The notes beneath the pieces are model-generated. The model was given only the letters and a program-made list of their open reading frames with translations. It was not told the origin of the DNA and did not search any database. From Phaeosaccion multiseriatum (lineage: Eukaryota > Protista > Ochrophyta, other classes): a stretch of 64,000 bases of DNA. Made by a program: the position numbers and the translations under genes. Location: the NCBI GenBank assembly GCA_965112735.1, contig OZ218961.1, positions 2,852,001 through 2,916,000 of the forward strand, in the 5' to 3' direction. This document shows positions 38,616 to 47,522 of this stretch, piece after piece; the stretch's first letter is position 1; every line of letters starts with the position of its first letter.

Positions 38616-41600
38616 CTAGATCATGTCCTTACTGATGTACTGCACCATGTAGGCCGAGCTCTTGTTGGTCAGCGCCCCTCTCTCCCCTACATCGCCTTTT
38701 CGATTGCCTAGAACCTTGCCCCTGCCCATTCCAAACCAAGCCCCCCAACCCCTCCCTTTGCGACGGTCGCCTCCGTAGGCATCCTCGAGCACTGTCTTTT
38801 CGCTCACGGGGAACACGCGATGATCGTCCAGCTTGAACCAGCCCTGAAGGAAGGAAGGAAGGAAGCAAGGAAGGAAGGAAGGAAGGAAGGAAGGAAGGAA
38901 GGAAGGAAGGAAGGGAGACAAGGCCACGGGTTTCAGTTTCAGGGTAGCATACTCTTCCATGTTTCATGGGTGTCAGCAAGTCCGAGCCATGCAGTGCCAT
39001 CCTCGATGGCCATGGGCGATTGGTGGGCGACGAGCTCATCGCCAACCTAAGGTCACCAAGCCAAAGAGGTCACCAAGAACGATGTCATCAATCAAGCACC
39101 AAGCTACTAAATAAGCCATCAAGCACTAAGTCAACAAGATAAGAGGTCGTCACGATCGAGCTACTAAGGAGGTCACCAAGCAATCCACTTTTTCACTTCA
39201 CTCACCTCGGGCGTGGAGGGGTCTGGCCTTACGTACGCGTAGTAGTGGCCCACTTCCGGCCCCCCAACATGCATCACCACCGCGTTGAGCACGTATTCTG
39301 TGCAATCGCCGCTGTCGATGGTCTTGTCGTTCTCATCCTGTGAGTGAGCGTTTCGAAAGGGGAATACGTAACCGCTTGTTAGAGACAGACGGGATCCGTG
39401 ATCTCCCACTCTTTCTCACGTGTGCTTTCCTTCTTCCCCCTCCTCCTCCTCCTCCCTCCCCCTTCTCTCCAGTCGCACCGCACCTTTGCTAACCAAGGCT
39501 TTACGTTAAGCTCTGCTGGGAACTCAAACCTCGAGTCCACCTTGCCCATACTCCCCGTGGCGGGGTCGAATTCGAATCGCTTCAAGTGAAAGTGGAGCAC
39601 GGGTGGAAAGCTCATGAACCTTACTCCTTTCTTTGCATTCTGTAACGCCGAAGCGGCCGGGGGGGGGAGGGAGGGAGGCGTGTGGTGCACACGATACGTT
39701 ATTACGTGAGGTGAGTCGGAGATGGAGATCTTGCTGCACGTAAGTCTTCCATTCTATCCTTCCTTCCGTGGCCTGAATCGTTCCTCTCTTCCTTGCCATG
39801 CACAGCCCCCCCCCTGCCTTACCTGCTTTCCATTCTCTTTGGTCTTCCACTGGTTGTCGCCAGTCAGAAGCTCGGGCGCACAGTATCTGTGAGTCAGAGT
39901 GTGTTTGTGTGTGCGTGTGTGTATGTGTGTGTGCGTGTGTGAGGAGGAGAGAGAGACTTGTAACTCATCCACATACGTGAGCACGACATCGTACATCATA
40001 TGGGAGGGAGCAAGAGTCCACAAGTCCCTCCAAACATCACCAACACGCCTGCACGCACATCGGCAAAGGGGTAATCTACTTCGGGCGACCACCTCTTCCC
40101 CATCCCTTCCTTTCTTTGGCCTGCTTTCATGTCTCTCTCTCAGTCCTCAGCCGCATTTCGCATGCTCTCCCTCTCCACACTCAGGTAGCTAGTTCGCCCA
40201 TGCACCACATTCACTTTCAATACTCAACGAACGCATCCAATCAATCCACTCACGCTTCTATGCTCTTGTCGAGCGTCTTGGTGCCCTTGACGTTAACAGA
40301 AATGTCATAGAAAGGCTCCTCCCACACCATCTCCTCCTTCACGTCTGTGCATCGAATGTACTGCTCCCAGGTGCCCGTGAAGAGCTCCTTCACTGCCTCT
40401 GCCACCTCTGGAGACGGACCAACACCCTCCTGCATGATGCACAAGAGAAAGAGGCGGACAGATGGCAGTCGATGATGAGAGGTGGACAGATGGCAGCCGA
40501 TGATGAGTGGTGGACAGATGGCAGCCGATGATGAGAGGTGGACAGATGGCAGCCGATGATGAGAGGTGGACAGATGGCAGCCGATGATGAGAGAAAGACA
40601 GATGGCAGCCGATGATGTGATTGGTGTAGTACGTTCTCGCACTAAAAACAAACCAAACCACTTGGAGAGGGGGGGGACGGGCTCGAAAGCAGCTAGTGGG
40701 AAGAATGAATCATGAATGACAGCTCAGCCTAGCTCCCCTCCCTCTCTCCCTCCCTTCCTTCCTCTCTCCCTCCCTCCCTCCCTACACCTCTCCCTCCCTT
40801 CCTCCCTTCCTCCCTCCCTCCCTCCCTCCCTCCCGCCTCCCTCCCTCAAGACCTGCCCTCCGCCCCTCCCTTCCTCACCACTTGCTCTCCACCGGCTTCG
40901 GCCTCGAGGTTCATAAACAAGAAGCGCGCAAACTCCTGAGCGTCTTGCTGGAACCGCGGATCGATGCCCATGGCTGCAGTCAGTGCCTCCGTCGAGGCTG
41001 GAGAGCCCTGGGTCTTAAGCTGGTAAAAGACCCGCTGCAGTCCCGTGATGCACACTCCCGGGTTCCTATAATAGCCGGCAGAGAGCAAGGTCTCGGCAAA
41101 GGGCCCTGCATGGAAGACGGTTTGCAGGAGCGAGTTCAGGTAGCAGGTATTACCCTGGTTATGAAGACCCGTGGGCTCTCCTGTCGCACTGCTGCTGCTG
41201 CTGCTAGTGGTGGTGCTGCTGCTGCTTATACTACTGACACTGTCGCTGCCTATACTACTGATACTGTCGGTGCTCATGCCGCTGGTGCTGCTGCTGTCGT
41301 CGTCGGTGGACGGTAGAGAAGACGCAGCTGCTTTCGCCGTTCCCTCGCTTCCTCCCCCGCGTGGCACCGCAAGGACCTCCGTCCTTCTCAGCGGCGCCTG
41401 ACACGCTTCCCCTTCTCTCTCGTTGCTTGCTGAGCATACCCGTGATACTGCCGAGACAGCTGCTGTGGCGCTGATGAACCCTGGAGAGATCTGGCACGCG
41501 CAATGATGGATTGCAACACATTGTTAGACTTCCCGTAGAGCCGTGCCCTGTGGGCAAAGATTAGCCCAACGCGTGACAGGCAACCTTCCTCGCACCTCTC

Positions 41601-41847
41601 CGGCGAGACCCACCCTCCCTACCACCACGAGCATGTCTGAGCTGCAGCCGCAGCCGAATCGTCGAGAACAACAGAGCAAATGCTAGACACATCTACACGT
41701 GTCTTGGCCTTGAAGCTGCACCGCTCAAGCACCTTTACTCACCGCTGCTATGTGGCCCAGCGAGGCATCCCCAAAGAAGGCCTCAGCACTACTCCCCTTG
41801 GAGATCAGGAGCGAGGCAAGGATTGCAACCGCGATCTTCGTCAGCAT
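38616..41847 (-). CDS. Ubiquitin-specific protease (peptidase C19, USP7-like catalytic domain only) with N-terminal signal + transit peptide
   Basis: Cys box GLHNQGNTCYLNSLLQ, QQDAQEF, PPVLHFHLKRFEFD, His box VMHVGGPEVGHYYAYVRP, WFKLDD and SAYMVQY. The predicted first exon 41847-41743 encodes MLTKIAVAILASLLISKGSSAEAFFGDASLGHIAA and ends at a GTGAGT donor. The 5' structure is less certain than the catalytic domain. Confidence 0.88.
40451..40617. repeat. Intronic 28-bp minisatellite, 6 copies (USP intron)
   Basis: Unit GAGGTGGACAGATGGCAGCCGATGATGA. Confidence 0.92.
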
Positions 41848-42183
41848 GGCTGATCTATCACGGAGGAAGACCCTATGCCTCGCCGTCCGCATCGTGTCCG
41901 TATTTCCCCTCTTAATCCCCCCGCAGCTTTGCTACAGCTGCAGCAGTCAGCCAGTAGCCAGGGCCCAATCCCAAGTCAGTATTAGTAAGAAACAGTAAGG
42001 GGAGGGAAGAGGGAAAGAGGGCGATTAGGTATGGAAGGGCATGATTTGATTTTTTTGCCATCCAGTGCCATCCGGAGCCTCAACACCCCACACATTCCCC
42101 CTTCTCCTCTCCTCTCTCTCTCTCTCTCTACTGCTTGCGAGGTCACAAGCTTCCCGTTCGTGCTCCCTCCCGTGGTAGTGATC

Positions 42184-44709
42184 ATGCTCACCTCCACTGG
42201 GGCGTCTCTTATTGTAGCTCTGGTGCTCTCGGGGACACCACACATCGTCAGCTTCACCCCTTTGGGGGGCGTGCTGAGTTTCAGCAGCAGCAGCAGCGGC
42301 AGTCGCTGCTCGTCGCCTCCTTGTTCTCAATCATCCACCGCACTGAAAGCAGTCGTCCTGAAAGACCAGCATAGGCGTAAGGACTTCGAAAGCGAGGAGG
42401 AGTTCGTCAGGACCAAGACACGGACCCAAGAGGCGGTGCGTGAGAGACGGGAGAGGAGAGGCAAAGTGGCAGTAATTGATCCGCCTTGGCCTAATTCTTC
42501 ATCTTTTATCATTACGGGCTCCTCTCTGCTTTCCATACCCTTGTCCTGGCACAGAAATACTTGGAGACGGGAGACTTTGACGCCGTCATCGGGTGCGACG
42601 AAGGTGAGGAAGGAGGGGAGGCGAGGGGTGGAGAGGGGTGAGCGTATCTGGTGAGGAGGGGCAGGGAGGCGTAGAGCTAGTCCATCTACGGTGGTGAAGA
42701 GAGATGGGGGGAGGGACAGGGGTGGGGAGGGGTGGGGAATGTTGGGAAGGAGTAGAGGTGAGGAGGTGGCGGGAAGGGGGGGAAGGGGCAGAGCTATCTA
42801 TGCTGGTGAGAATTGGTGAGGGGGAGCAGAGCCGGCCCATCTGCACGGGTGAGAAGGGGTGCTGGTGTTGCTTGGCAGCGAGACATCTCCCGTCCCCTCT
42901 ACCCTCGGCACACCATCTCTTTTTTGGACGAAAGACCTCACGCCATGTCTCACTCCATCTCGTCCTCTTCCCCCCTCTCGGCAGCCGGAGTGTCCAATCT
43001 AGCCGGGCCTGTGATTGGCGCCGCGTGCTATATCCCCCCCGGAGTACACCTGGACGGCGTGAAGGACTCTAAGCTCATTCGGAGGAGAGAAGACAGATAC
43101 GCTCTCTATGACCAAATTGTGGGCACGGAGGGCGTGAAGTGGGCCACCTTCGCAATCGACCCCGAAAGAATAGACAAAATCAACATCCATCAGTCCGTGT
43201 TAGAGGCGACGAAGGTGAGTGAGTGAGTGAGTGAGTGAGTGAGTGAGTGAGTGAGTGAGTGGGCTAGTGAGTCGGTGAGTGAGCGAGTGAGCTCAGTCCG
43301 TGTTGGAGGCGACAATGGTGGGTGAGTGGCGTCGGTCCGGCGGAAGAGGTCTGGCAATGGATGTGGGGTGCCGGTGGAGAGCACTATGGATAGAGAGTGG
43401 AGAGTGGAGCAGCAGGAGCAGCAGCAGCAGCAGCACGAGCAGCGAGGAGGATCTTCTTTACGGCCCTGTCCGAACGCCAGAGGAGCGGCTGGCAGAGGAG
43501 CTCACAGGTTTTGTTGTTGTTGTCGTAAGAGGGCATGAAAAGACGAGAAGAAAACCCACACACACACACACACATCTTCTTCGCTGACGGTCATGTACGA
43601 CCCACACACATGGCGTTTTGATCCGCGGAAACTCCTGCCCTACCTACACCCACCCCCAATCACACCCCCAACCACACCACCCCGCCTCTCTCAGGGCTGT
43701 GCGCAGGCCCTGGCAGATGAGTTCGAGGGCCAGCGAGTCATGGTGCTAGTGGATGGCAAGTCCCTGCCTCCAGACCTCAGGCGATCGCGTGAGAACATTG
43801 CCGTACGTGCCATTGTGCAGGGAGACTCACAGGAGCTGTGCATCAGTGCTGCCAGGTCAGAGGGAGGGAGGGGGGGAGGGAGGGAGGAAGAGGAGAAGGG
43901 TGGGAGGGAGGGAGGGAGGGAGGAAGGGAGGGAGACTGACGGACAGATGACGCATGGGCCTGGTCTTGCTCGCCTGCCTTTCATTCATTTCACGCGCGAA
44001 CGAACCAGCTCCAGCTGTTGATGTGGGTTGTACGTTGTGTATGGCCCTCGTTTCCGCTTTTGCATTCGGCTGTCGTCTATCTTCTTTCTCCTCCTCTCCC
44101 GACCAACGAACGAACCCAACCCAACCACCCAACCAACCAACCAACTAGCCCAACCAAACCACCCAACACTCACTCATACACACACACGCATACTCACGCG
44201 CCCACCCATACACCCACGCCACCCAACCAACCACCCAAACAACCAAGCAACCAACAAACCAACTAACCGACCAACCAACCATCCACCCGACCAACCAACC
44301 AACCAACCAACCTATCAACCTGCCTACCTACCCACCAACCAACCACCCAATCACCCAACGAACCAACCAACCAACCAACCAACCACCCAACCAAATCAGT
44401 ATCATTGCACGCGTAACGGTGGATCGCATCATGAAGGACTTCCACGAGGAGTACCCAAACTACAACTTTGCCAAACACGTAGGAGCCCCCACTCGGGAGC
44501 ACAAGGACAACATTAAGAGGTACGGAGCGTCGAGGATCCATCGCTTCTCGTACAAGCCCCTCAAGGGTCTCAACAAGGAGTCCTACCTCAAGTGGTGGGA
44601 GGGTGCCGCGGAGAGAGCGAGTTACAAGGGGGAGAGGGTGGGACCGGATGAGGACAACGCGCCAGCGAGGGCTTGGAACGCCGTGAAGGAAAGAAGCGAA
44701 CGAGTGTAG
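42184..44709 (+). CDS. rnhB: Bacterial-type ribonuclease HII, predicted plastid-targeted, atypical substrate-recognition motifs (5 exons)
   Basis: Exons 42184-42436, 42555-42603, 42985-43214, ~43695-43855 and ~44400-44709 give VIGCDEAGVSNLAGPVIGAA, VKDSK, IDKINI, VLVDG, IVQGD..CISAASIIARVTVDRIM, YPNYNFAKHVGAPT and HRFSYKP. Leader is MLTSTGASLIVALVL...VS-FTP. Confidence 0.9.
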
Positions 44710-45221
44710 CGGTAGCGGTGGTGACAGGGGGGGGGGTGGGGCGGCCGTCAAGGAAAGAGAGAAAGGAGTGGCAGGTACATAGCGGCGATGGTTTCGATCG
44801 ATCCGTGGGGCCAGAATAGGGTTTTGTGTACGACGTGTTAGTACCATGTGTAAGAAGTTGAGAGTCTGGACAGGATCTTGACCCGACGCTAGATACGCAG
44901 CCCTCGACGGACCAGACGGACGAAGAACAGGTTGTAACGGAGGCCACAGGTGGTGATATGAATACGTATGGACACGTGTGTGTATGCCATGAAAACAAGA
45001 GAGCTTCAGTGCGCTTTGTCCCTCCCTCTGGGCGGTGCGAGCGTGCCTCCCAACGGGTGTGCTGTATCCCCTCACGTTGACGACCTGAGCTGCGATGGAT
45101 CACAATTTGTCCTTTTAGTATTTCTTACAGTTTTGGTGACAGTTTTAGACTCGCTCATTAGATAGGCATGCAGGGCGAACACGAGCCGCGACTACACTGA
45201 GACTGATGAAGTGTGTTCGAA

Positions 45222-47522
45222 TCAGTCCTTCGGATCTTCCACTCCCACGGGCCCGATGGAGAATTGGCACTCGCTCTCTGCCAGGGTGGGTGAGTCGAAT
45301 ACCTGGCAAATGCGGTTCTCGCCCCGCCCCTTTCGGAATCTTAGCCTTTGTGGAGGAAAGCAAAAAGAACGAGACACAAGAGACAGTAAGAAATAGGAAA
45401 GACGCTATGCCGCCTCGGCCTCGCCCCCCCCCCCCATTAATGACAGAGGACGACGGGAGAGGGGAGCAACCCTTTCCACTCAACACATACATGCCCGCCC
45501 GCCCGCCTGCCCGCCCGCCTGCCCGCCCGCCTGCCCGCCCGCACGTACACACATACACAATACATTCAATTCCCCGGGTGTTGCCACCCTGCCCGCCGTG
45601 TCTCTGTCACCCACCCCACCCCACCTGGTCGTTGAGGCGTGTGCCATGATGTTGCCTCCGATGGGCTTGGTGGCATCTTTGGCGAAGCTCATGCCGTCGG
45701 GGTTGGCCACCACCTGGTTAGTCAGCACCACCGCCACGCCAAACTCCTCCGCCATTCGAGTAAGCTGTCGCAAGAACCTGTGGGGTAAGAAAGGAAGCGC
45801 CAGGAGATAATGAGCAGAAGGAAGGGGTAGCAGCATCGGTGACAGTGTCCTTGGTGCGGGGAGGAGGAAGCAGCAGCAGTATCAGTGACAGCTTCAATGA
45901 TGAGGCTTGGGCGGGAGGGGCGTTGTTGGGGAGCTTCACGAGGAGAGAAAGAACCTTTCACAACAAGCGGCGCGGTACAGAACAAAATGCACGCATTCCA
46001 TGATTCCGGGGTGCACTCACTGGGCAAGTTGCATCTGCCTCTCGGACAGCTCCCCTCGGCCGCTGTAATCTGTGCGGTAGAGCGCCGTGGCACTGTCAAC
46101 CACAATGAGCGCATACCTGGTAGTGGTGGTGGTGGTTGGGGGGGGGGGGTGTCGAAAGCGGGACAAGCGAATTAGAGTGAGGGTAGAGGCAGGCAGAGAG
46201 GTCGACAGAGACAGGAGCGCAGAGCAGAGCACTCGACGCGGACGATTTGAAACACACTCGACCCTTAAAGCAAGCACAGCAGCGGACGAGCCCACCCCTC
46301 CTACCCCCCTTTCCCCCGCCAAACACACGCGTGTGTCGGTGCCTCCCGTCCACCCCCCATGCCGGCCCTGGCGACGCACCTGTCCTCCGCCATCATGGCC
46401 GACGCCATCTTCAAGAGGTCCATCTGCTGCTCCGAGTTGTGGGCCCGAGCGTACGCCACATTATCCATTATGTCATCGCCTGTGCAGCAGTGGGGTCAGC
46501 GACGTCACAAGAGTGAGGCATGGAGGAATGTGATCATCATCATCAAGTGGTCGATGAGTTGGGTAAAGGGCCCACTCGTCAGGTCAACTTCAGCGTGAAG
46601 ATGGTGACCAGTCCAGCCCCTTTCGCCACTCACCGTTGAGTCCGAATCTGTCTGCGATATCCACCAGCCTCTTGGGTCGAAAGGTTCCCTCCGTGTCAAT
46701 GTACATTGCCTTTCCCTCCGCCCCCCCCTGATCCAGCGGCAATTGGCACGTCACGCACAGAGTGTGGCACATCTGCGTCTTCCCCGTGCGAAACTCTCCG
46801 AAAATCTCCGTGAGAGATCCCGTCTCCACCCCTCCTTCTAAGAGTTTGTCCACCTCCTTGGACCCAGTAGAGAGGCGAATCAGATCCTGCCGTTGCAGCA
46901 TGTGCTGAGCGGCGGTGGTGAACCCAATGGGCACCAACTTCTGCACCGTCTCTTTCAATTTCGCTGCTTTCTGCTCGCTGATACCCTTGATGTCTGTAAG
47001 CTTGCGCATCGTAGCGTGGGCAACCTGCTCGGCGGAGAAAGTCGTAGCGGTGAAAGGGTTAGGTGATCCACTCACCGGGGAAAACGCGGGAACTGGGGCT
47101 CTGCCACCGTCTGGCACATGGCGGGAATTTTATTCTTCGGGCATCTCCTGCTCAACTGCCCGCCACGCCCACCCATCGAGTCCCTTACCGCTTCCACCGT
47201 GCAAAGTCCCGCCTCCGAGAGCCGCTGGACGTCGTTGGCATTGAAGCCGTGAGCCTCGAGCTCCGTGACGTGGTGGAACGCCTGCATAATCTGTGGGGAA
47301 GCACCCGCGGACGAGAAGGCTATTGAGGACTCCAGAGCTTGAATGGGAAAGCCCCTCTTTGTCCATCAAAGCCTTTCCCCGCGAGCTCCTCCCGCGTCAG
47401 CTACCTCTCTCCGATACGGAGATGCATTTTGAACTCACCTCCATCTCCTGGTCTTGCTCGCTGCCTTGTTGCTGCTCATTTGGGGCTTGATTCTCCTGAG
47501 ACTGCTGCATAGCAGACGCCAT
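45222..47522 (-). CDS. RAD51: RAD51 recombinase (7 exons)
   Basis: [49 protein letters not shown] and [14 protein letters not shown]. The GGNI and ATALYRTDY residues are RAD51-type rather than DMC1-type. Confidence 0.96.

What the first reader, a model, noticed from the sequence alone, without database searches (positions are those of the whole stretch)
42184..44709. Plastid-targeted RNase HII that looks like a natural 'RED' (ribonucleotide-excision-defective) enzyme
Seen: the four acidic catalytic positions (GCDE, VDG, GD) and the DSK motif are intact. The DEAGRGP motif, however, reads DEAGVSN (codons 42987-42998), and the HKGY(P/G)T motif reads HVGAPT (Ala codon 44485-44487); AKVxRD reads ARVTVD. 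Established: the GRG motif and this Tyr (T. maritima Y163, human Y210) recognise the 2'-OH at RNA-DNA junctions. The engineered RNase H2-RED mutant (human P40D/Y210A, yeast P45D/Y219A) changes exactly the Pro and Tyr that are Asn and Ala here, losing single-rNMP incision while keeping RNA:DNA hybrid cleavage. Inference: a neofunctionalised organellar RNase HII with RNase HI/HIII-like (R-loop or primer) or new specificity. The changes fall in two separate exons of an intact ORF, which argues against sequencing error or decay.
Basis: partly seen in the sequence, partly recalled or inferred. Interest (0 to 1): 0.85.

Follow-up and report, generated by a model that had tools for sequence, protein, structure and literature searches.

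The report
RNase HII missing its ribonucleotide sensor
An unsampled golden-brown alga has an intact gene for a bacterial-type DNA-repair nuclease (RNase HII) that keeps its cutting centre. It has replaced the residues, otherwise invariant, that let this enzyme family find a single RNA letter in DNA, so it probably works differently, but nothing has been tested at the bench.

Summary
A five-exon gene (42184-44709, + strand, 333 aa, all introns GT-AG) encodes a bacterial-type RNase HII. The catalytic D-E-D-D residues and the DSK motif are intact. GRGP reads GVSN, AKVTRD reads ARVTVD and HKGYPT reads HVGAPT.

- **Rarity:** about 365 informative homologues all keep the Tyr, and GRG is nearly invariant. 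That includes the other 33 rows of the well-supported ochrophyte clade that holds this protein.
- **Not an error:** each sensor codon differs from any ancestral codon by at least 2 bases. DNA contigs from four runs of one sample agree with the window.
- **Selection:** the ORF is intact, and clade-conserved columns changed far less (25%) than variable ones (67%). The gene is therefore under selection, although its branch is about three times longer than its relatives'.

The lost residues are the RNA-DNA junction sensor: Tm R22, G23, Y163 and the supporting R141. The closest natural analogue is RNase HIII, which has Ala at the Tyr position, no central Arg and a polar residue after the loop. That is a closer match than the engineered RED mutant.

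Loss of single-ribonucleotide incision is likely. Retained hybrid cleavage is plausible but unproven, because the equivalent T. maritima double mutant is inactive with Mg2+. No RNA data, no close orthologue and no paralogue survey were available. Plastid targeting is inferred only.

The parts
42184..42435 (+). Exon 1: predicted N-terminal leader. A hydrophobic core TGASLIVALVLSG (42196-42234) is followed by IVS|F and a Ser-rich stretch, then a basic/acidic linker.
   Evidence: Kyte-Doolittle 2.36 over residues 5-15. Diatom homologues P0337 and P0340 start similarly. The start codon is not verified: an in-frame ATG at 42031 has no stop before 42184.
42555..42603 (+). Exon 2: KYLETGDFDAVIGCDE with catalytic Asp99 and Glu100 (GCDE at 42591-42602). 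The Ala101 codon is split across intron 2.
   Evidence: The frame has no ATG upstream, so the exon must be spliced to exon 1.
42985..43214 (+). Exon 3: altered sensor loop G-V-S-N (42987-42998) in place of G-R-G-P, then LAGPV and an intact DSK (43065-43073). The helix reads NIHQSVLEAT where the family has NILQATLEAM.
43695..43855 (+). Exon 4: catalytic Asp197 (VDG, 43749-43757) and Asp221 (QGDS, 43818-43829). Gln219 replaces the phosphate-binding Lys (Tm K122). There is a 5-aa insertion relative to the clade.
   Evidence: An alternative in-frame acceptor 12 nt downstream (43707) is possible and would remove only GCAQ.
44400..44709 (+). Exon 5: ARVTVD (44407-44424; K235R, and R238V = Tm R141), HVGAPT (44476-44493; K258V, and Y260A = Tm Y163), retained IHR (Tm R182) and KP (Tm P187), then a 47-aa non-conserved tail and the stop codon.

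Best explanation
This is a real nuclear gene under selection. It belongs by descent to the ochrophyte clade of the bacterial-type, organelle-associated RNase HII found in algae and lower plants. On this lineage the RNA-DNA junction sensor has been dismantled: the central Arg and second Gly of the GRG loop, the following Pro, the Arg that props the loop (Tm R141), the Lys of HKGY and the otherwise invariant Tyr (Tm Y163). The two-metal catalytic centre (D99, E100, D197, D221) and the DSK loop are kept.

Shown: the gene structure by homology, the substitutions, their rarity, the clade placement, the long branch and the intact ORF.

Inferred: without the Tyr and the GRG geometry, the enzyme can no longer deform and recognise a single ribonucleotide-DNA junction, so it has lost the incision step of ribonucleotide excision repair. 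If it is still catalytic, it most likely acts like RNase HIII or the RED mutant, cutting stretches of consecutive ribonucleotides in RNA:DNA hybrids (primers, R-loops). The Ser104 and Asn105 side chains would take the 2'-OH contacts that Asp103 makes in B. stearothermophilus RNase H3. Catalysis may depend on Mn2+ rather than Mg2+. The signal-peptide-like leader with an IVS|F junction suggests delivery to the complex plastid.
For: - **Gene model and motifs:**
- **DNA confirmed:** four runs agree with the window.
- **Homology:** BLASTP E = 1e-58 to P0193, which itself passes NCBIfam RNase HII with 214 bits. The spliced protein scores 228 bits against a family HMM built without it.
- **Placement:** inside a 98% SH-aLRT clade with diatoms, Triparma and MMETSP sequences.
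- **Rarity:** Tyr 347/347 and GRG 286/294 in homologues. The window differs at 12 of 59 family-conserved columns. Four of the six a-priori sensor residues of Rychlik 2010 are hit (hypergeometric p = 0.013), while none of the 7 catalytic or DSK residues is hit.
- **Age of the changes:** all six sensor replacements need at least 2 nucleotide changes per codon.
- **Selection:** clade-conserved columns changed 25%, against 67% for variable columns. In a substitution-only neutral simulation reaching 25% amino-acid change, only 0.75% of runs stayed free of stops. GC3 is 0.71 against GC2 0.45.
- **Literature:** Tyr plus GRG form the junction sensor and R141 stabilises GRG. RNase H3 has Ala at the Tyr position, a GTGD loop and no central Arg. 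Yeast P45D-Y219A keeps hybrid cleavage but loses single-rNMP cleavage. Mn2+ relaxes the need for the Tyr-induced phosphate deformation.
Against: - No transcript evidence exists: no RNA run holds the locus.
- No close orthologue exists, so there is no dN/dS and no proof that the variant is conserved.
- T. maritima Y163A is essentially dead, and C24D-Y163A is inactive in Mg2+.
- The second Gly of the loop is kept even in RNase H3, but here it is Ser. Bst H3 D103N has reduced activity.
- Further conserved residues have changed (E135R, L169H, M176T, N199K, K219Q), and the end branch is 1.34 against about 0.4 for relatives. Broader loss of nucleic-acid binding is therefore possible.
- Retention of the 7 catalytic residues is not significant on its own (p = 0.18).
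- Localisation is untested.
Confidence: 0.5

Rival explanations
1. A pseudo-nuclease or very weak enzyme. The protein is kept by selection for a non-catalytic or barely catalytic role, such as binding hybrids or a partner protein. Loss of Tyr, the GRG geometry, R141 and K122 would have abolished productive substrate positioning.
For: Tm Y163A is undetectable with Mg2+ and Tm C24D-Y163A is inactive with Mg2+. Yeast Y219A has less than 0.1% activity on all substrates. Three to four basic residues of the binding face are lost. The protein lacks the RRSxRL motif that most eukaryotic homologues carry. It sits in the 8th percentile of family HMM scores.
Against: All four metal-binding carboxylates and the DSK motif are kept across a branch on which 25% of clade-conserved columns changed. 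The polar Ser-Asn pair at the loop mimics the RNase H3 solution.
Confidence: 0.25
2. It is still a junction (RER) enzyme. A remodelled loop (Ser104, Asn105) senses the 2'-OH in a new way, so single-rNMP incision persists.
For: Tm R22A hardly affects activity. Some homologues tolerate GYG, GCG, GAG or GTG loops. Ser and Asn side chains can hydrogen-bond a 2'-OH.
Against: All those loop variants keep the Tyr. Tyr stacking on the +2 deoxyribose is what selects the RNA-DNA junction and sets up metal A. Every Tyr substitution tested abolished RpD cleavage.
Confidence: 0.08
3. A gene in early decay: a redundant paralogue drifting after duplication, with a canonical copy elsewhere in the genome.
For: It has the longest end branch in its clade (1.34) and three times more hits at conserved columns than any relative. 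No expression data exist.
Against: The 333-codon ORF is intact and all eight splice sites are canonical. Neutral simulation gives 0.75% stop-free outcomes at this divergence even when indels are ignored. Conserved columns are still protected, at 25% changed against 67% for variable columns. There is coding-type GC3 bias. No second copy lies in this window.
Confidence: 0.07
4. An assembly, sequencing or gene-model artefact.
For: The exon joins rest on prediction only. X3 and X4 contigs show homopolymer-type indels at 42776, 42970 and 43034.
Against: The motif codons are identical in contigs from four runs. Both altered motifs lie inside exons, contiguous with conserved flanks. At least 2 nt changes per altered codon exclude single miscalls. 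The exon order and junctions match homologues residue for residue.
Confidence: 0.03

Closest known systems
Bacterial-type organellar RNase HII of algae and non-seed plants (for example Cyanidioschyzon merolae CMT626C; diatom, Triparma, oomycete, Marchantia homologues)
   Same: Same family by descent: 40-48% identity over the whole catalytic domain, the same domain order and an N-terminal extension. The window protein nests in the ochrophyte clade. The family is proposed to remove primers in organelles.
   Different: All sampled members keep GRGP, AKVTRD and HKGY. This one has GVSN, ARVTVD and HVGA, lacks the upstream RRSxRL motif, and evolves about 3 times faster.
RNase HIII (for example B. 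stearothermophilus RNase H3, PDB 2D0B)
   Same: A type 2 RNase H fold with Ala at the junction-Tyr position, no central Arg in the loop and a polar residue right after the loop. These enzymes cut runs of ribonucleotides and not single rNMPs.
   Different: RNase HIII keeps both loop glycines (GTGD), uses a DEDE tetrad and has an N-terminal substrate-binding domain. The window protein has Ser at the second Gly, Asn instead of Asp/Glu/Ser, and a DEDD tetrad. It has no such domain and no hit to the NCBIfam rnhC model. The resemblance would be convergent.
Engineered RNase H2-RED (yeast Rnh201 P45D-Y219A; mouse RNase H2A P40D-Y211A)
   Same: The same two positions are altered: Pro after GRG, and the junction Tyr to Ala.
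   Different: RED is a heterotrimeric eukaryotic enzyme with GRG and the Arg props intact and Asp at the Pro position. The window protein is monomeric bacterial-type, and the same design in T. maritima RNase H2 gave no Mg2+ activity.

Membership tests
RNase HII (type 2 RNase H, Pfam PF01351 / NCBIfam NF000595) | Significant sequence homology across the catalytic domain | tested here: met
   BLASTP E = 1e-58 to P0193. 228 bits against a family HMM built without it. Exon pieces hit only RNase HII models.
RNase HII (type 2 RNase H, Pfam PF01351 / NCBIfam NF000595) | Curated equivalog score cut-off (NF000595, 167 bits) | tested here: inconclusive
   Only exon pieces could be submitted: 41.7 + 20.5 + 61 bits, with exon 2 not scored. 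The sum is below 167, whereas P0193 reaches 214.
RNase HII (type 2 RNase H, Pfam PF01351 / NCBIfam NF000595) | DEDD catalytic carboxylates and DSK loop | tested here: met
   D99, E100, D197, D221 and D128-S129-K130 all match columns conserved at 99% or more.
RNase HII (type 2 RNase H, Pfam PF01351 / NCBIfam NF000595) | GRG 2'-OH-sensing loop | tested here: not met
   The loop reads G-V-S. R is V (1 of 273 homologues) and the second G is S (0 of 273).
RNase HII (type 2 RNase H, Pfam PF01351 / NCBIfam NF000595) | Invariant junction Tyr (Tm Y163) | tested here: not met
   Ala260 aligns under Tm Tyr. 0 of 273 aligned and 0 of 347 motif-scanned homologues lack Tyr.
RNase HII (type 2 RNase H, Pfam PF01351 / NCBIfam NF000595) | Two Arg that stabilise the GRG loop (Tm R141, R182) | tested here: not met
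   The R141 equivalent is Val238 (0 of 273 homologues). The R182 equivalent, Arg279, is kept.
RNase HII (type 2 RNase H, Pfam PF01351 / NCBIfam NF000595) | Cleavage 5' of a single ribonucleotide in duplex DNA | not testable with these tools
   Needs an enzyme assay.
RNase HIII | No junction Tyr (Ala) and no central Arg in the loop | tested here: met
   A260 and V103. The family traits are taken from Chon 2013 and the 2026 review.
RNase HIII | Both loop glycines kept, followed by Asp/Glu/Ser (GTGD type) | tested here: not met
   The second Gly is Ser and the next residue is Asn. Bst D103N has reduced activity.
RNase HIII | DEDE tetrad, N-terminal substrate-binding domain, match to the rnhC model | tested here: not met
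   The fourth carboxylate is the RNase HII-type Asp in GDS. The N-terminus has no domain hit. There is no TIGR00716 hit, and the tree places the protein inside RNase HII.
RNase H2-RED design | Tyr to Ala plus an acidic residue at the Pro position, with the GRG loop otherwise intact | tested here: not met
   Tyr to Ala is met. The Pro position is Asn, not Asp or Glu, and GRG is not intact.
Ochrophyte complex-plastid import substrate (bipartite presequence) | ER-type signal peptide, with an aromatic residue at +1 of the cleavage site and a hydroxylated transit-peptide-like region | tested here: inconclusive
   A hydrophobic core at residues 5-17 (KD 2.36), IVS|F at 21-24 and a Ser-rich 30-50 region. 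P0337 is similar, with TAS|F. No predictor was available, the start codon is unverified, and there is no localisation data.

The most novel reading that the evidence does not exclude
A naturally evolved separation-of-function RNase HII. Inside the RNase HII lineage, a plastid-directed copy has converged on the RNase HIII solution: no Tyr, no central Arg, and polar side chains at the loop. It would remove primers and R-loops but leave single embedded ribonucleotides in plastid DNA. That would imply that this plastid genome tolerates or uses rNMPs and has no RER.
Probability: 0.35. Interest if true: 0.75.

Novelty: new variant of a known kind. Interest (0 to 1): 0.55.

Why it matters
The junction Tyr and the GRG loop are treated as invariant hallmarks of RNase HII/H2. 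A 2026 review calls the Tyr invariant. The separation of RER from hybrid removal has so far been studied with engineered RED alleles and with the distinct RNase HIII family.

A selected natural RNase HII that has dropped the sensor while keeping the catalytic centre would do three things:
- It would give a natural test of which residues suffice for hybrid versus junction cleavage in the monomeric bacterial-type enzyme.
- It would show whether RNase HIII-like specificity can arise repeatedly from RNase HII.
- It would bear on why organelle DNA carries many unrepaired ribonucleotides.

If the protein turns out to be inactive, it is instead an example of a conserved-fold pseudo-nuclease. That is of narrower interest.

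Tried and rejected
- **Transcript evidence:** no RNA run holds the locus. The four holders are DNA contigs of one sample and show no spliced joints.
- **Close orthologues for dN/dS:**
  - The representative-library search with exon 5 gave at best 59% identity over 58 aa.
  - Two profile searches, each using a scaffold homologue plus the window exons, found only canonical proteins at 46% identity or less.
  - A fragment-length search with exon 5 found nothing.
  - The metagenome scan gave six bacterial-type loci, all canonical.
- **Second RNase HII in the window:** none in six-frame HMM scanning. The rest of the genome could not be searched, and notes from the earlier scan mention none.
- **Alternative exon or frame restoring GRGP:** rejected. 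GVSN is contiguous with LAGPV, the other frames give no GRGP, and no RRSxRL-coding piece lies on the + strand at 40500-44800.
- **Copy of the exon-3 end in intron 3 (D7):** it cannot serve as an alternative donor, because a stop lies in the (GTGA)n array.
- **C-terminal tail:** not conserved in the two homologues compared, which had given longer matches.
- **Structure prediction of the spliced protein:** not done. Residue roles were therefore mapped through the sequence alignment to T. maritima and the published contacts.
- **Direct alignment to RNase HIII sequences:** not possible, because none could be fetched. RNase HIII traits are taken from papers.
Full report
**1. What is in the sequence**

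Reading 41900-45000 and joining open segments at canonical GT-AG sites gives a five-exon gene on the + strand: 42184-42435, 42555-42603, 42985-43214, 43695-43855 and 44400-44709. It is 1002 nt and 333 codons plus a stop.

The joins are fixed by homology. Exon 2 ends in VIGCDE and exon 3 continues with (A)GVSNLAGPVIGAACYIP. The nearest homologue, P0193, reads [27 protein letters not shown] at the same place. The exon 4/5 join gives CISAAS|IIARVTVD, against CIAAASILAKVTRD in P0193.

Exon 2 has no ATG in its frame upstream (open only from 42495), so an upstream exon is required. AGVSNLAGPV is contiguous in the genome, and HVGAPT lies in the middle of exon 5. Neither altered motif therefore depends on a splice decision.

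**2. Is the DNA right?**

Four public runs (one sample and one study, possibly the assembly's source) hold 88-96% of the stretch's words. Their contigs lie on the exons, and on introns up to the microsatellites, with no differing letters at the motif codons. They show introns and no spliced joints, so they are DNA. No RNA run was found, so expression and splicing remain untested.

Each of the six sensor-related replacements needs at least two nucleotide changes from any codon of the ancestral residue, and K235R needs three. This excludes miscalls and shows that the changes are old and multi-step.

**3. Family and position**

- The exon pieces hit only RNase HII models in Pfam and NCBIfam, and no RNase HIII model.
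- HMMER against PDB sequences aligns exon 5 to T. maritima RNase H2 (3O3G, 3O3F, 4HHT, 2ETJ; E = 3e-11). Window ARVTVD falls under AKVFRD, and HVGA under HKGY. Exon 3 aligns to E. coli RNase HII.
- The spliced protein scores 228 bits against an HMM built from 273 homologues without it. That is the 8th percentile; the median is 285.
- Three large searches gave 367 homologues. The best is an MMETSP transcript, P0193, at 46% identity over 216 aa.
- In a maximum-likelihood tree of 134 rows, the window protein falls in a clade of 34 rows with 98% SH-aLRT support. The clade holds Thalassiosira, Skeletonema, Attheya, Triparma and several MMETSP sequences. Green-algal, bryophyte and oomycete copies lie just outside the clade, and chlamydial sequences further out.
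- This matches the published picture of a bacterial-type, possibly Chlamydiae-derived, organellar RNase HII that is conserved in algae and lost in angiosperms. The C. merolae enzyme is mitochondrial by GFP fusion.

**4. How unusual are the substitutions?**

Column-by-column results come from the 273-sequence alignment.

| Measure | Window protein | Comparison |
|---|---|---|
| Columns conserved at 85% or more | keeps 47 of 59 | — |
| Columns conserved at 97% or more | departs at 5 of 30 | 229 of the other 273 rows show no departure and only two show five or more |
| Clade-conserved columns changed (leave-one-out, 34-row clade) | 17 of 68 (25%) | median 3%, maximum 8.7% in the other 33 rows |
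| Variable columns differing from the majority | 67% | 44-61% among the rows listed |
| End branch length | 1.34 | mostly about 0.4; the longest other clade branch is 1.02 |

- The 12 differing columns are R103V, G104S, P105N, V111I, L169H, A171S, M176T, A228S, K235R, R238V, K258V and Y260A.
- Five of these window residues occur in none of the 273 homologues.
- The Tyr is present in 347 of 347 motifs found by pattern. It is also present in all but two of the 20 sequences that the pattern missed: one fragment lacks the region and one is a broken gene model. GRG is present in 286 of 294.
- The rare loop variants (GYG, GCG, GAG, GTG, GSG, GVE) all keep the Tyr.

The protein is therefore an outlier in a specific way, on top of a generally faster rate.

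**5. What the changed residues do (literature)**

Rychlik et al. 2010 describe the T. maritima complex:
- Backbone amides of G21, R22 and G23, together with the hydroxyl of Y163, bind the 2'-OH of the junction ribonucleotide.
- The Tyr ring stacks on the +2 deoxyribose. This deforms the backbone so that the +2 phosphate helps to bind metal A.
- R22 lies in the minor groove and steadies E19.
- K47, K122 and K138 bind phosphates.
- R141 and R182 stabilise the GRG loop.

Mapped through the alignment, the window protein has V for R22, S for G23, V for R141, A for Y163, Q for K122 and R for K138. It keeps G21, K47 (DSK), R182 and P187. Four of the six a-priori sensor residues are hit, when 12 of 59 conserved columns are hit overall (hypergeometric p = 0.013). 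None of the seven catalytic or DSK residues is hit, but that alone is not significant (p = 0.18).

**6. Comparison with RED and RNase HIII**

Chon et al. 2013 report the following:
- Yeast Y219A has less than 0.1% activity on all substrates.
- Adding P45D, copied from Asp103 of B. stearothermophilus RNase H3, restores 40% activity on poly-rA/poly-dT but less than 0.1% on a single rNMP.
- RNase H3 has Ala at the Tyr position and a GTGD loop. Its D103N mutant has reduced activity.
- T. maritima Y163A is undetectable with Mg2+. T. maritima C24D-Y163A is inactive with Mg2+ and only partly active with Mn2+, and it loses junction selectivity.

The 2026 review states that RNase HIII lacks both the invariant Tyr and the central Arg. 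The window protein shares those two hallmark losses and has a polar residue (Asn) at the Asp103 position. It differs from RNase HIII in four ways: Ser at the second Gly, a DEDD rather than DEDE tetrad, no N-terminal binding domain, and its phylogenetic position. It differs from RED by its altered GRG loop, the lost R141 and its monomeric bacterial-type scaffold.

The bacterial-enzyme data warn that activity, at least with Mg2+, cannot be assumed.

**7. Is the gene alive?**

- The ORF is intact over 333 codons, with eight canonical splice sites.
- A substitution-only simulation that drives the CDS to 25% amino-acid change leaves only 0.75% of replicates free of stops. At 10% change the figure is 19%. 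Indels and splice-site loss were ignored, which makes the test conservative.
- Conserved columns are still changed much less often than variable ones.
- Codon positions show GC3 0.71, GC1 0.57 and GC2 0.45.

Together with the multi-step codon changes, this indicates that the sensor was lost long ago and that the protein has been kept since. I read this as selection for a product. Selection for catalysis specifically is not shown.

**8. Targeting**

The predicted start MLTSTGASLIVALVLSGTPHIVS|FTPLGG has a signal-peptide-like hydrophobic core (mean Kyte-Doolittle 2.36). It has a small residue at -1 with Phe at +1, followed by a Ser-rich stretch. Diatom homologues P0337 (…SAKTAS|FTF…) and P0340 begin in the same style.

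This fits the bipartite plastid presequence of ochrophytes, but several things remain open:
- No predictor was available.
- An in-frame ATG at 42031 is not excluded.
- Many homologue models are N-terminally incomplete.
- The only localised family member is mitochondrial.

I rate plastid delivery as plausible, at about 0.6, and not shown.

**9. Verdict**

Most likely (0.5) this is a selected, organelle-directed RNase HII that has lost RNA-DNA junction sensing, and therefore RER incision. If it is active, it behaves like RNase HIII, possibly with a preference for Mn2+.

The rivals are:
- a selected but essentially non-catalytic protein (0.25);
- retained RER through a new sensor (0.08);
- early decay (0.07);
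- an artefact (0.03).

It is a new variant of a known kind. Interest is moderate to high for RNase H and organelle-genome specialists. It is limited by resting on a single genome with no transcript, no orthologue and no paralogue survey.

Noticed in passing
Homologues P0193, P0337, P0340, P0084, P0202, P0216, P0151, P0166, P0275, P0283 and others; absent from window 40500-44800 (+): Most eukaryotic bacterial-type RNase HII proteins with an N-terminal extension carry a short basic motif [RK][RQK]SxR[LIFV], typically RRSARL, RRSSRL or RRSPRL. It is found in 129 of 187 such proteins and in 22 of 33 in the ochrophyte clade. It lies 65-146 aa upstream of the catalytic domain, across stramenopiles, Cercozoa, green algae and bryophytes. 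The window protein lacks it. I know of no described function.
   Followed up: partly
window 43190-43225 and 43293-43328: A 36-nt copy (89% identical) of the end of exon 3 plus its donor site sits 103 nt downstream inside intron 3. The two copies are separated by a (GTGA)n array that begins exactly at the donor GT. The copy cannot be used as a donor without reading through a stop codon.
   Followed up: partly
window 43855-43943 and 44103-44398: Intron 4 is built almost wholly of a G-rich (GGGA)n-like array at its 5' end and a C/A-rich (CCAA)n-like array of about 300 nt at its 3' end. Logan contigs break at these arrays.
   Followed up: no
window 42031-42183: An in-frame ATG at 42031 lies 51 codons upstream of the chosen start, with no stop between them. 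The stretch crosses a (CT)n tract at about 42110-42130. If it were used, the hydrophobic segment would be internal rather than N-terminal.
   Followed up: no
window 45480-45836 (-): The ORF translation contains a RecA/Rad51-type segment (…[36 protein letters not shown]…). A Rad51/Dmc1-like gene therefore lies just downstream on the opposite strand.
   Followed up: no
P0009 (667 aa), P0018, P0116, P0074, P0099 (representative library): A few, mostly short and probably bacterial, RNase HII relatives have non-Arg loops (GVES, GYGA, GAGS, GTGT) but keep the Tyr. P0009 is extremely divergent, with an end branch of 7.6 and 27 departures at the 59 conserved columns.
   Followed up: no
Tree: Simkaniaceae and Rhabdochlamydiaceae RNase HII sequences form a well-supported group within the large group that also holds the eukaryotic algal, plant and oomycete sequences. 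That fits the published suggestion of a Chlamydiae-like bacterial origin for this organellar enzyme.
   Followed up: no
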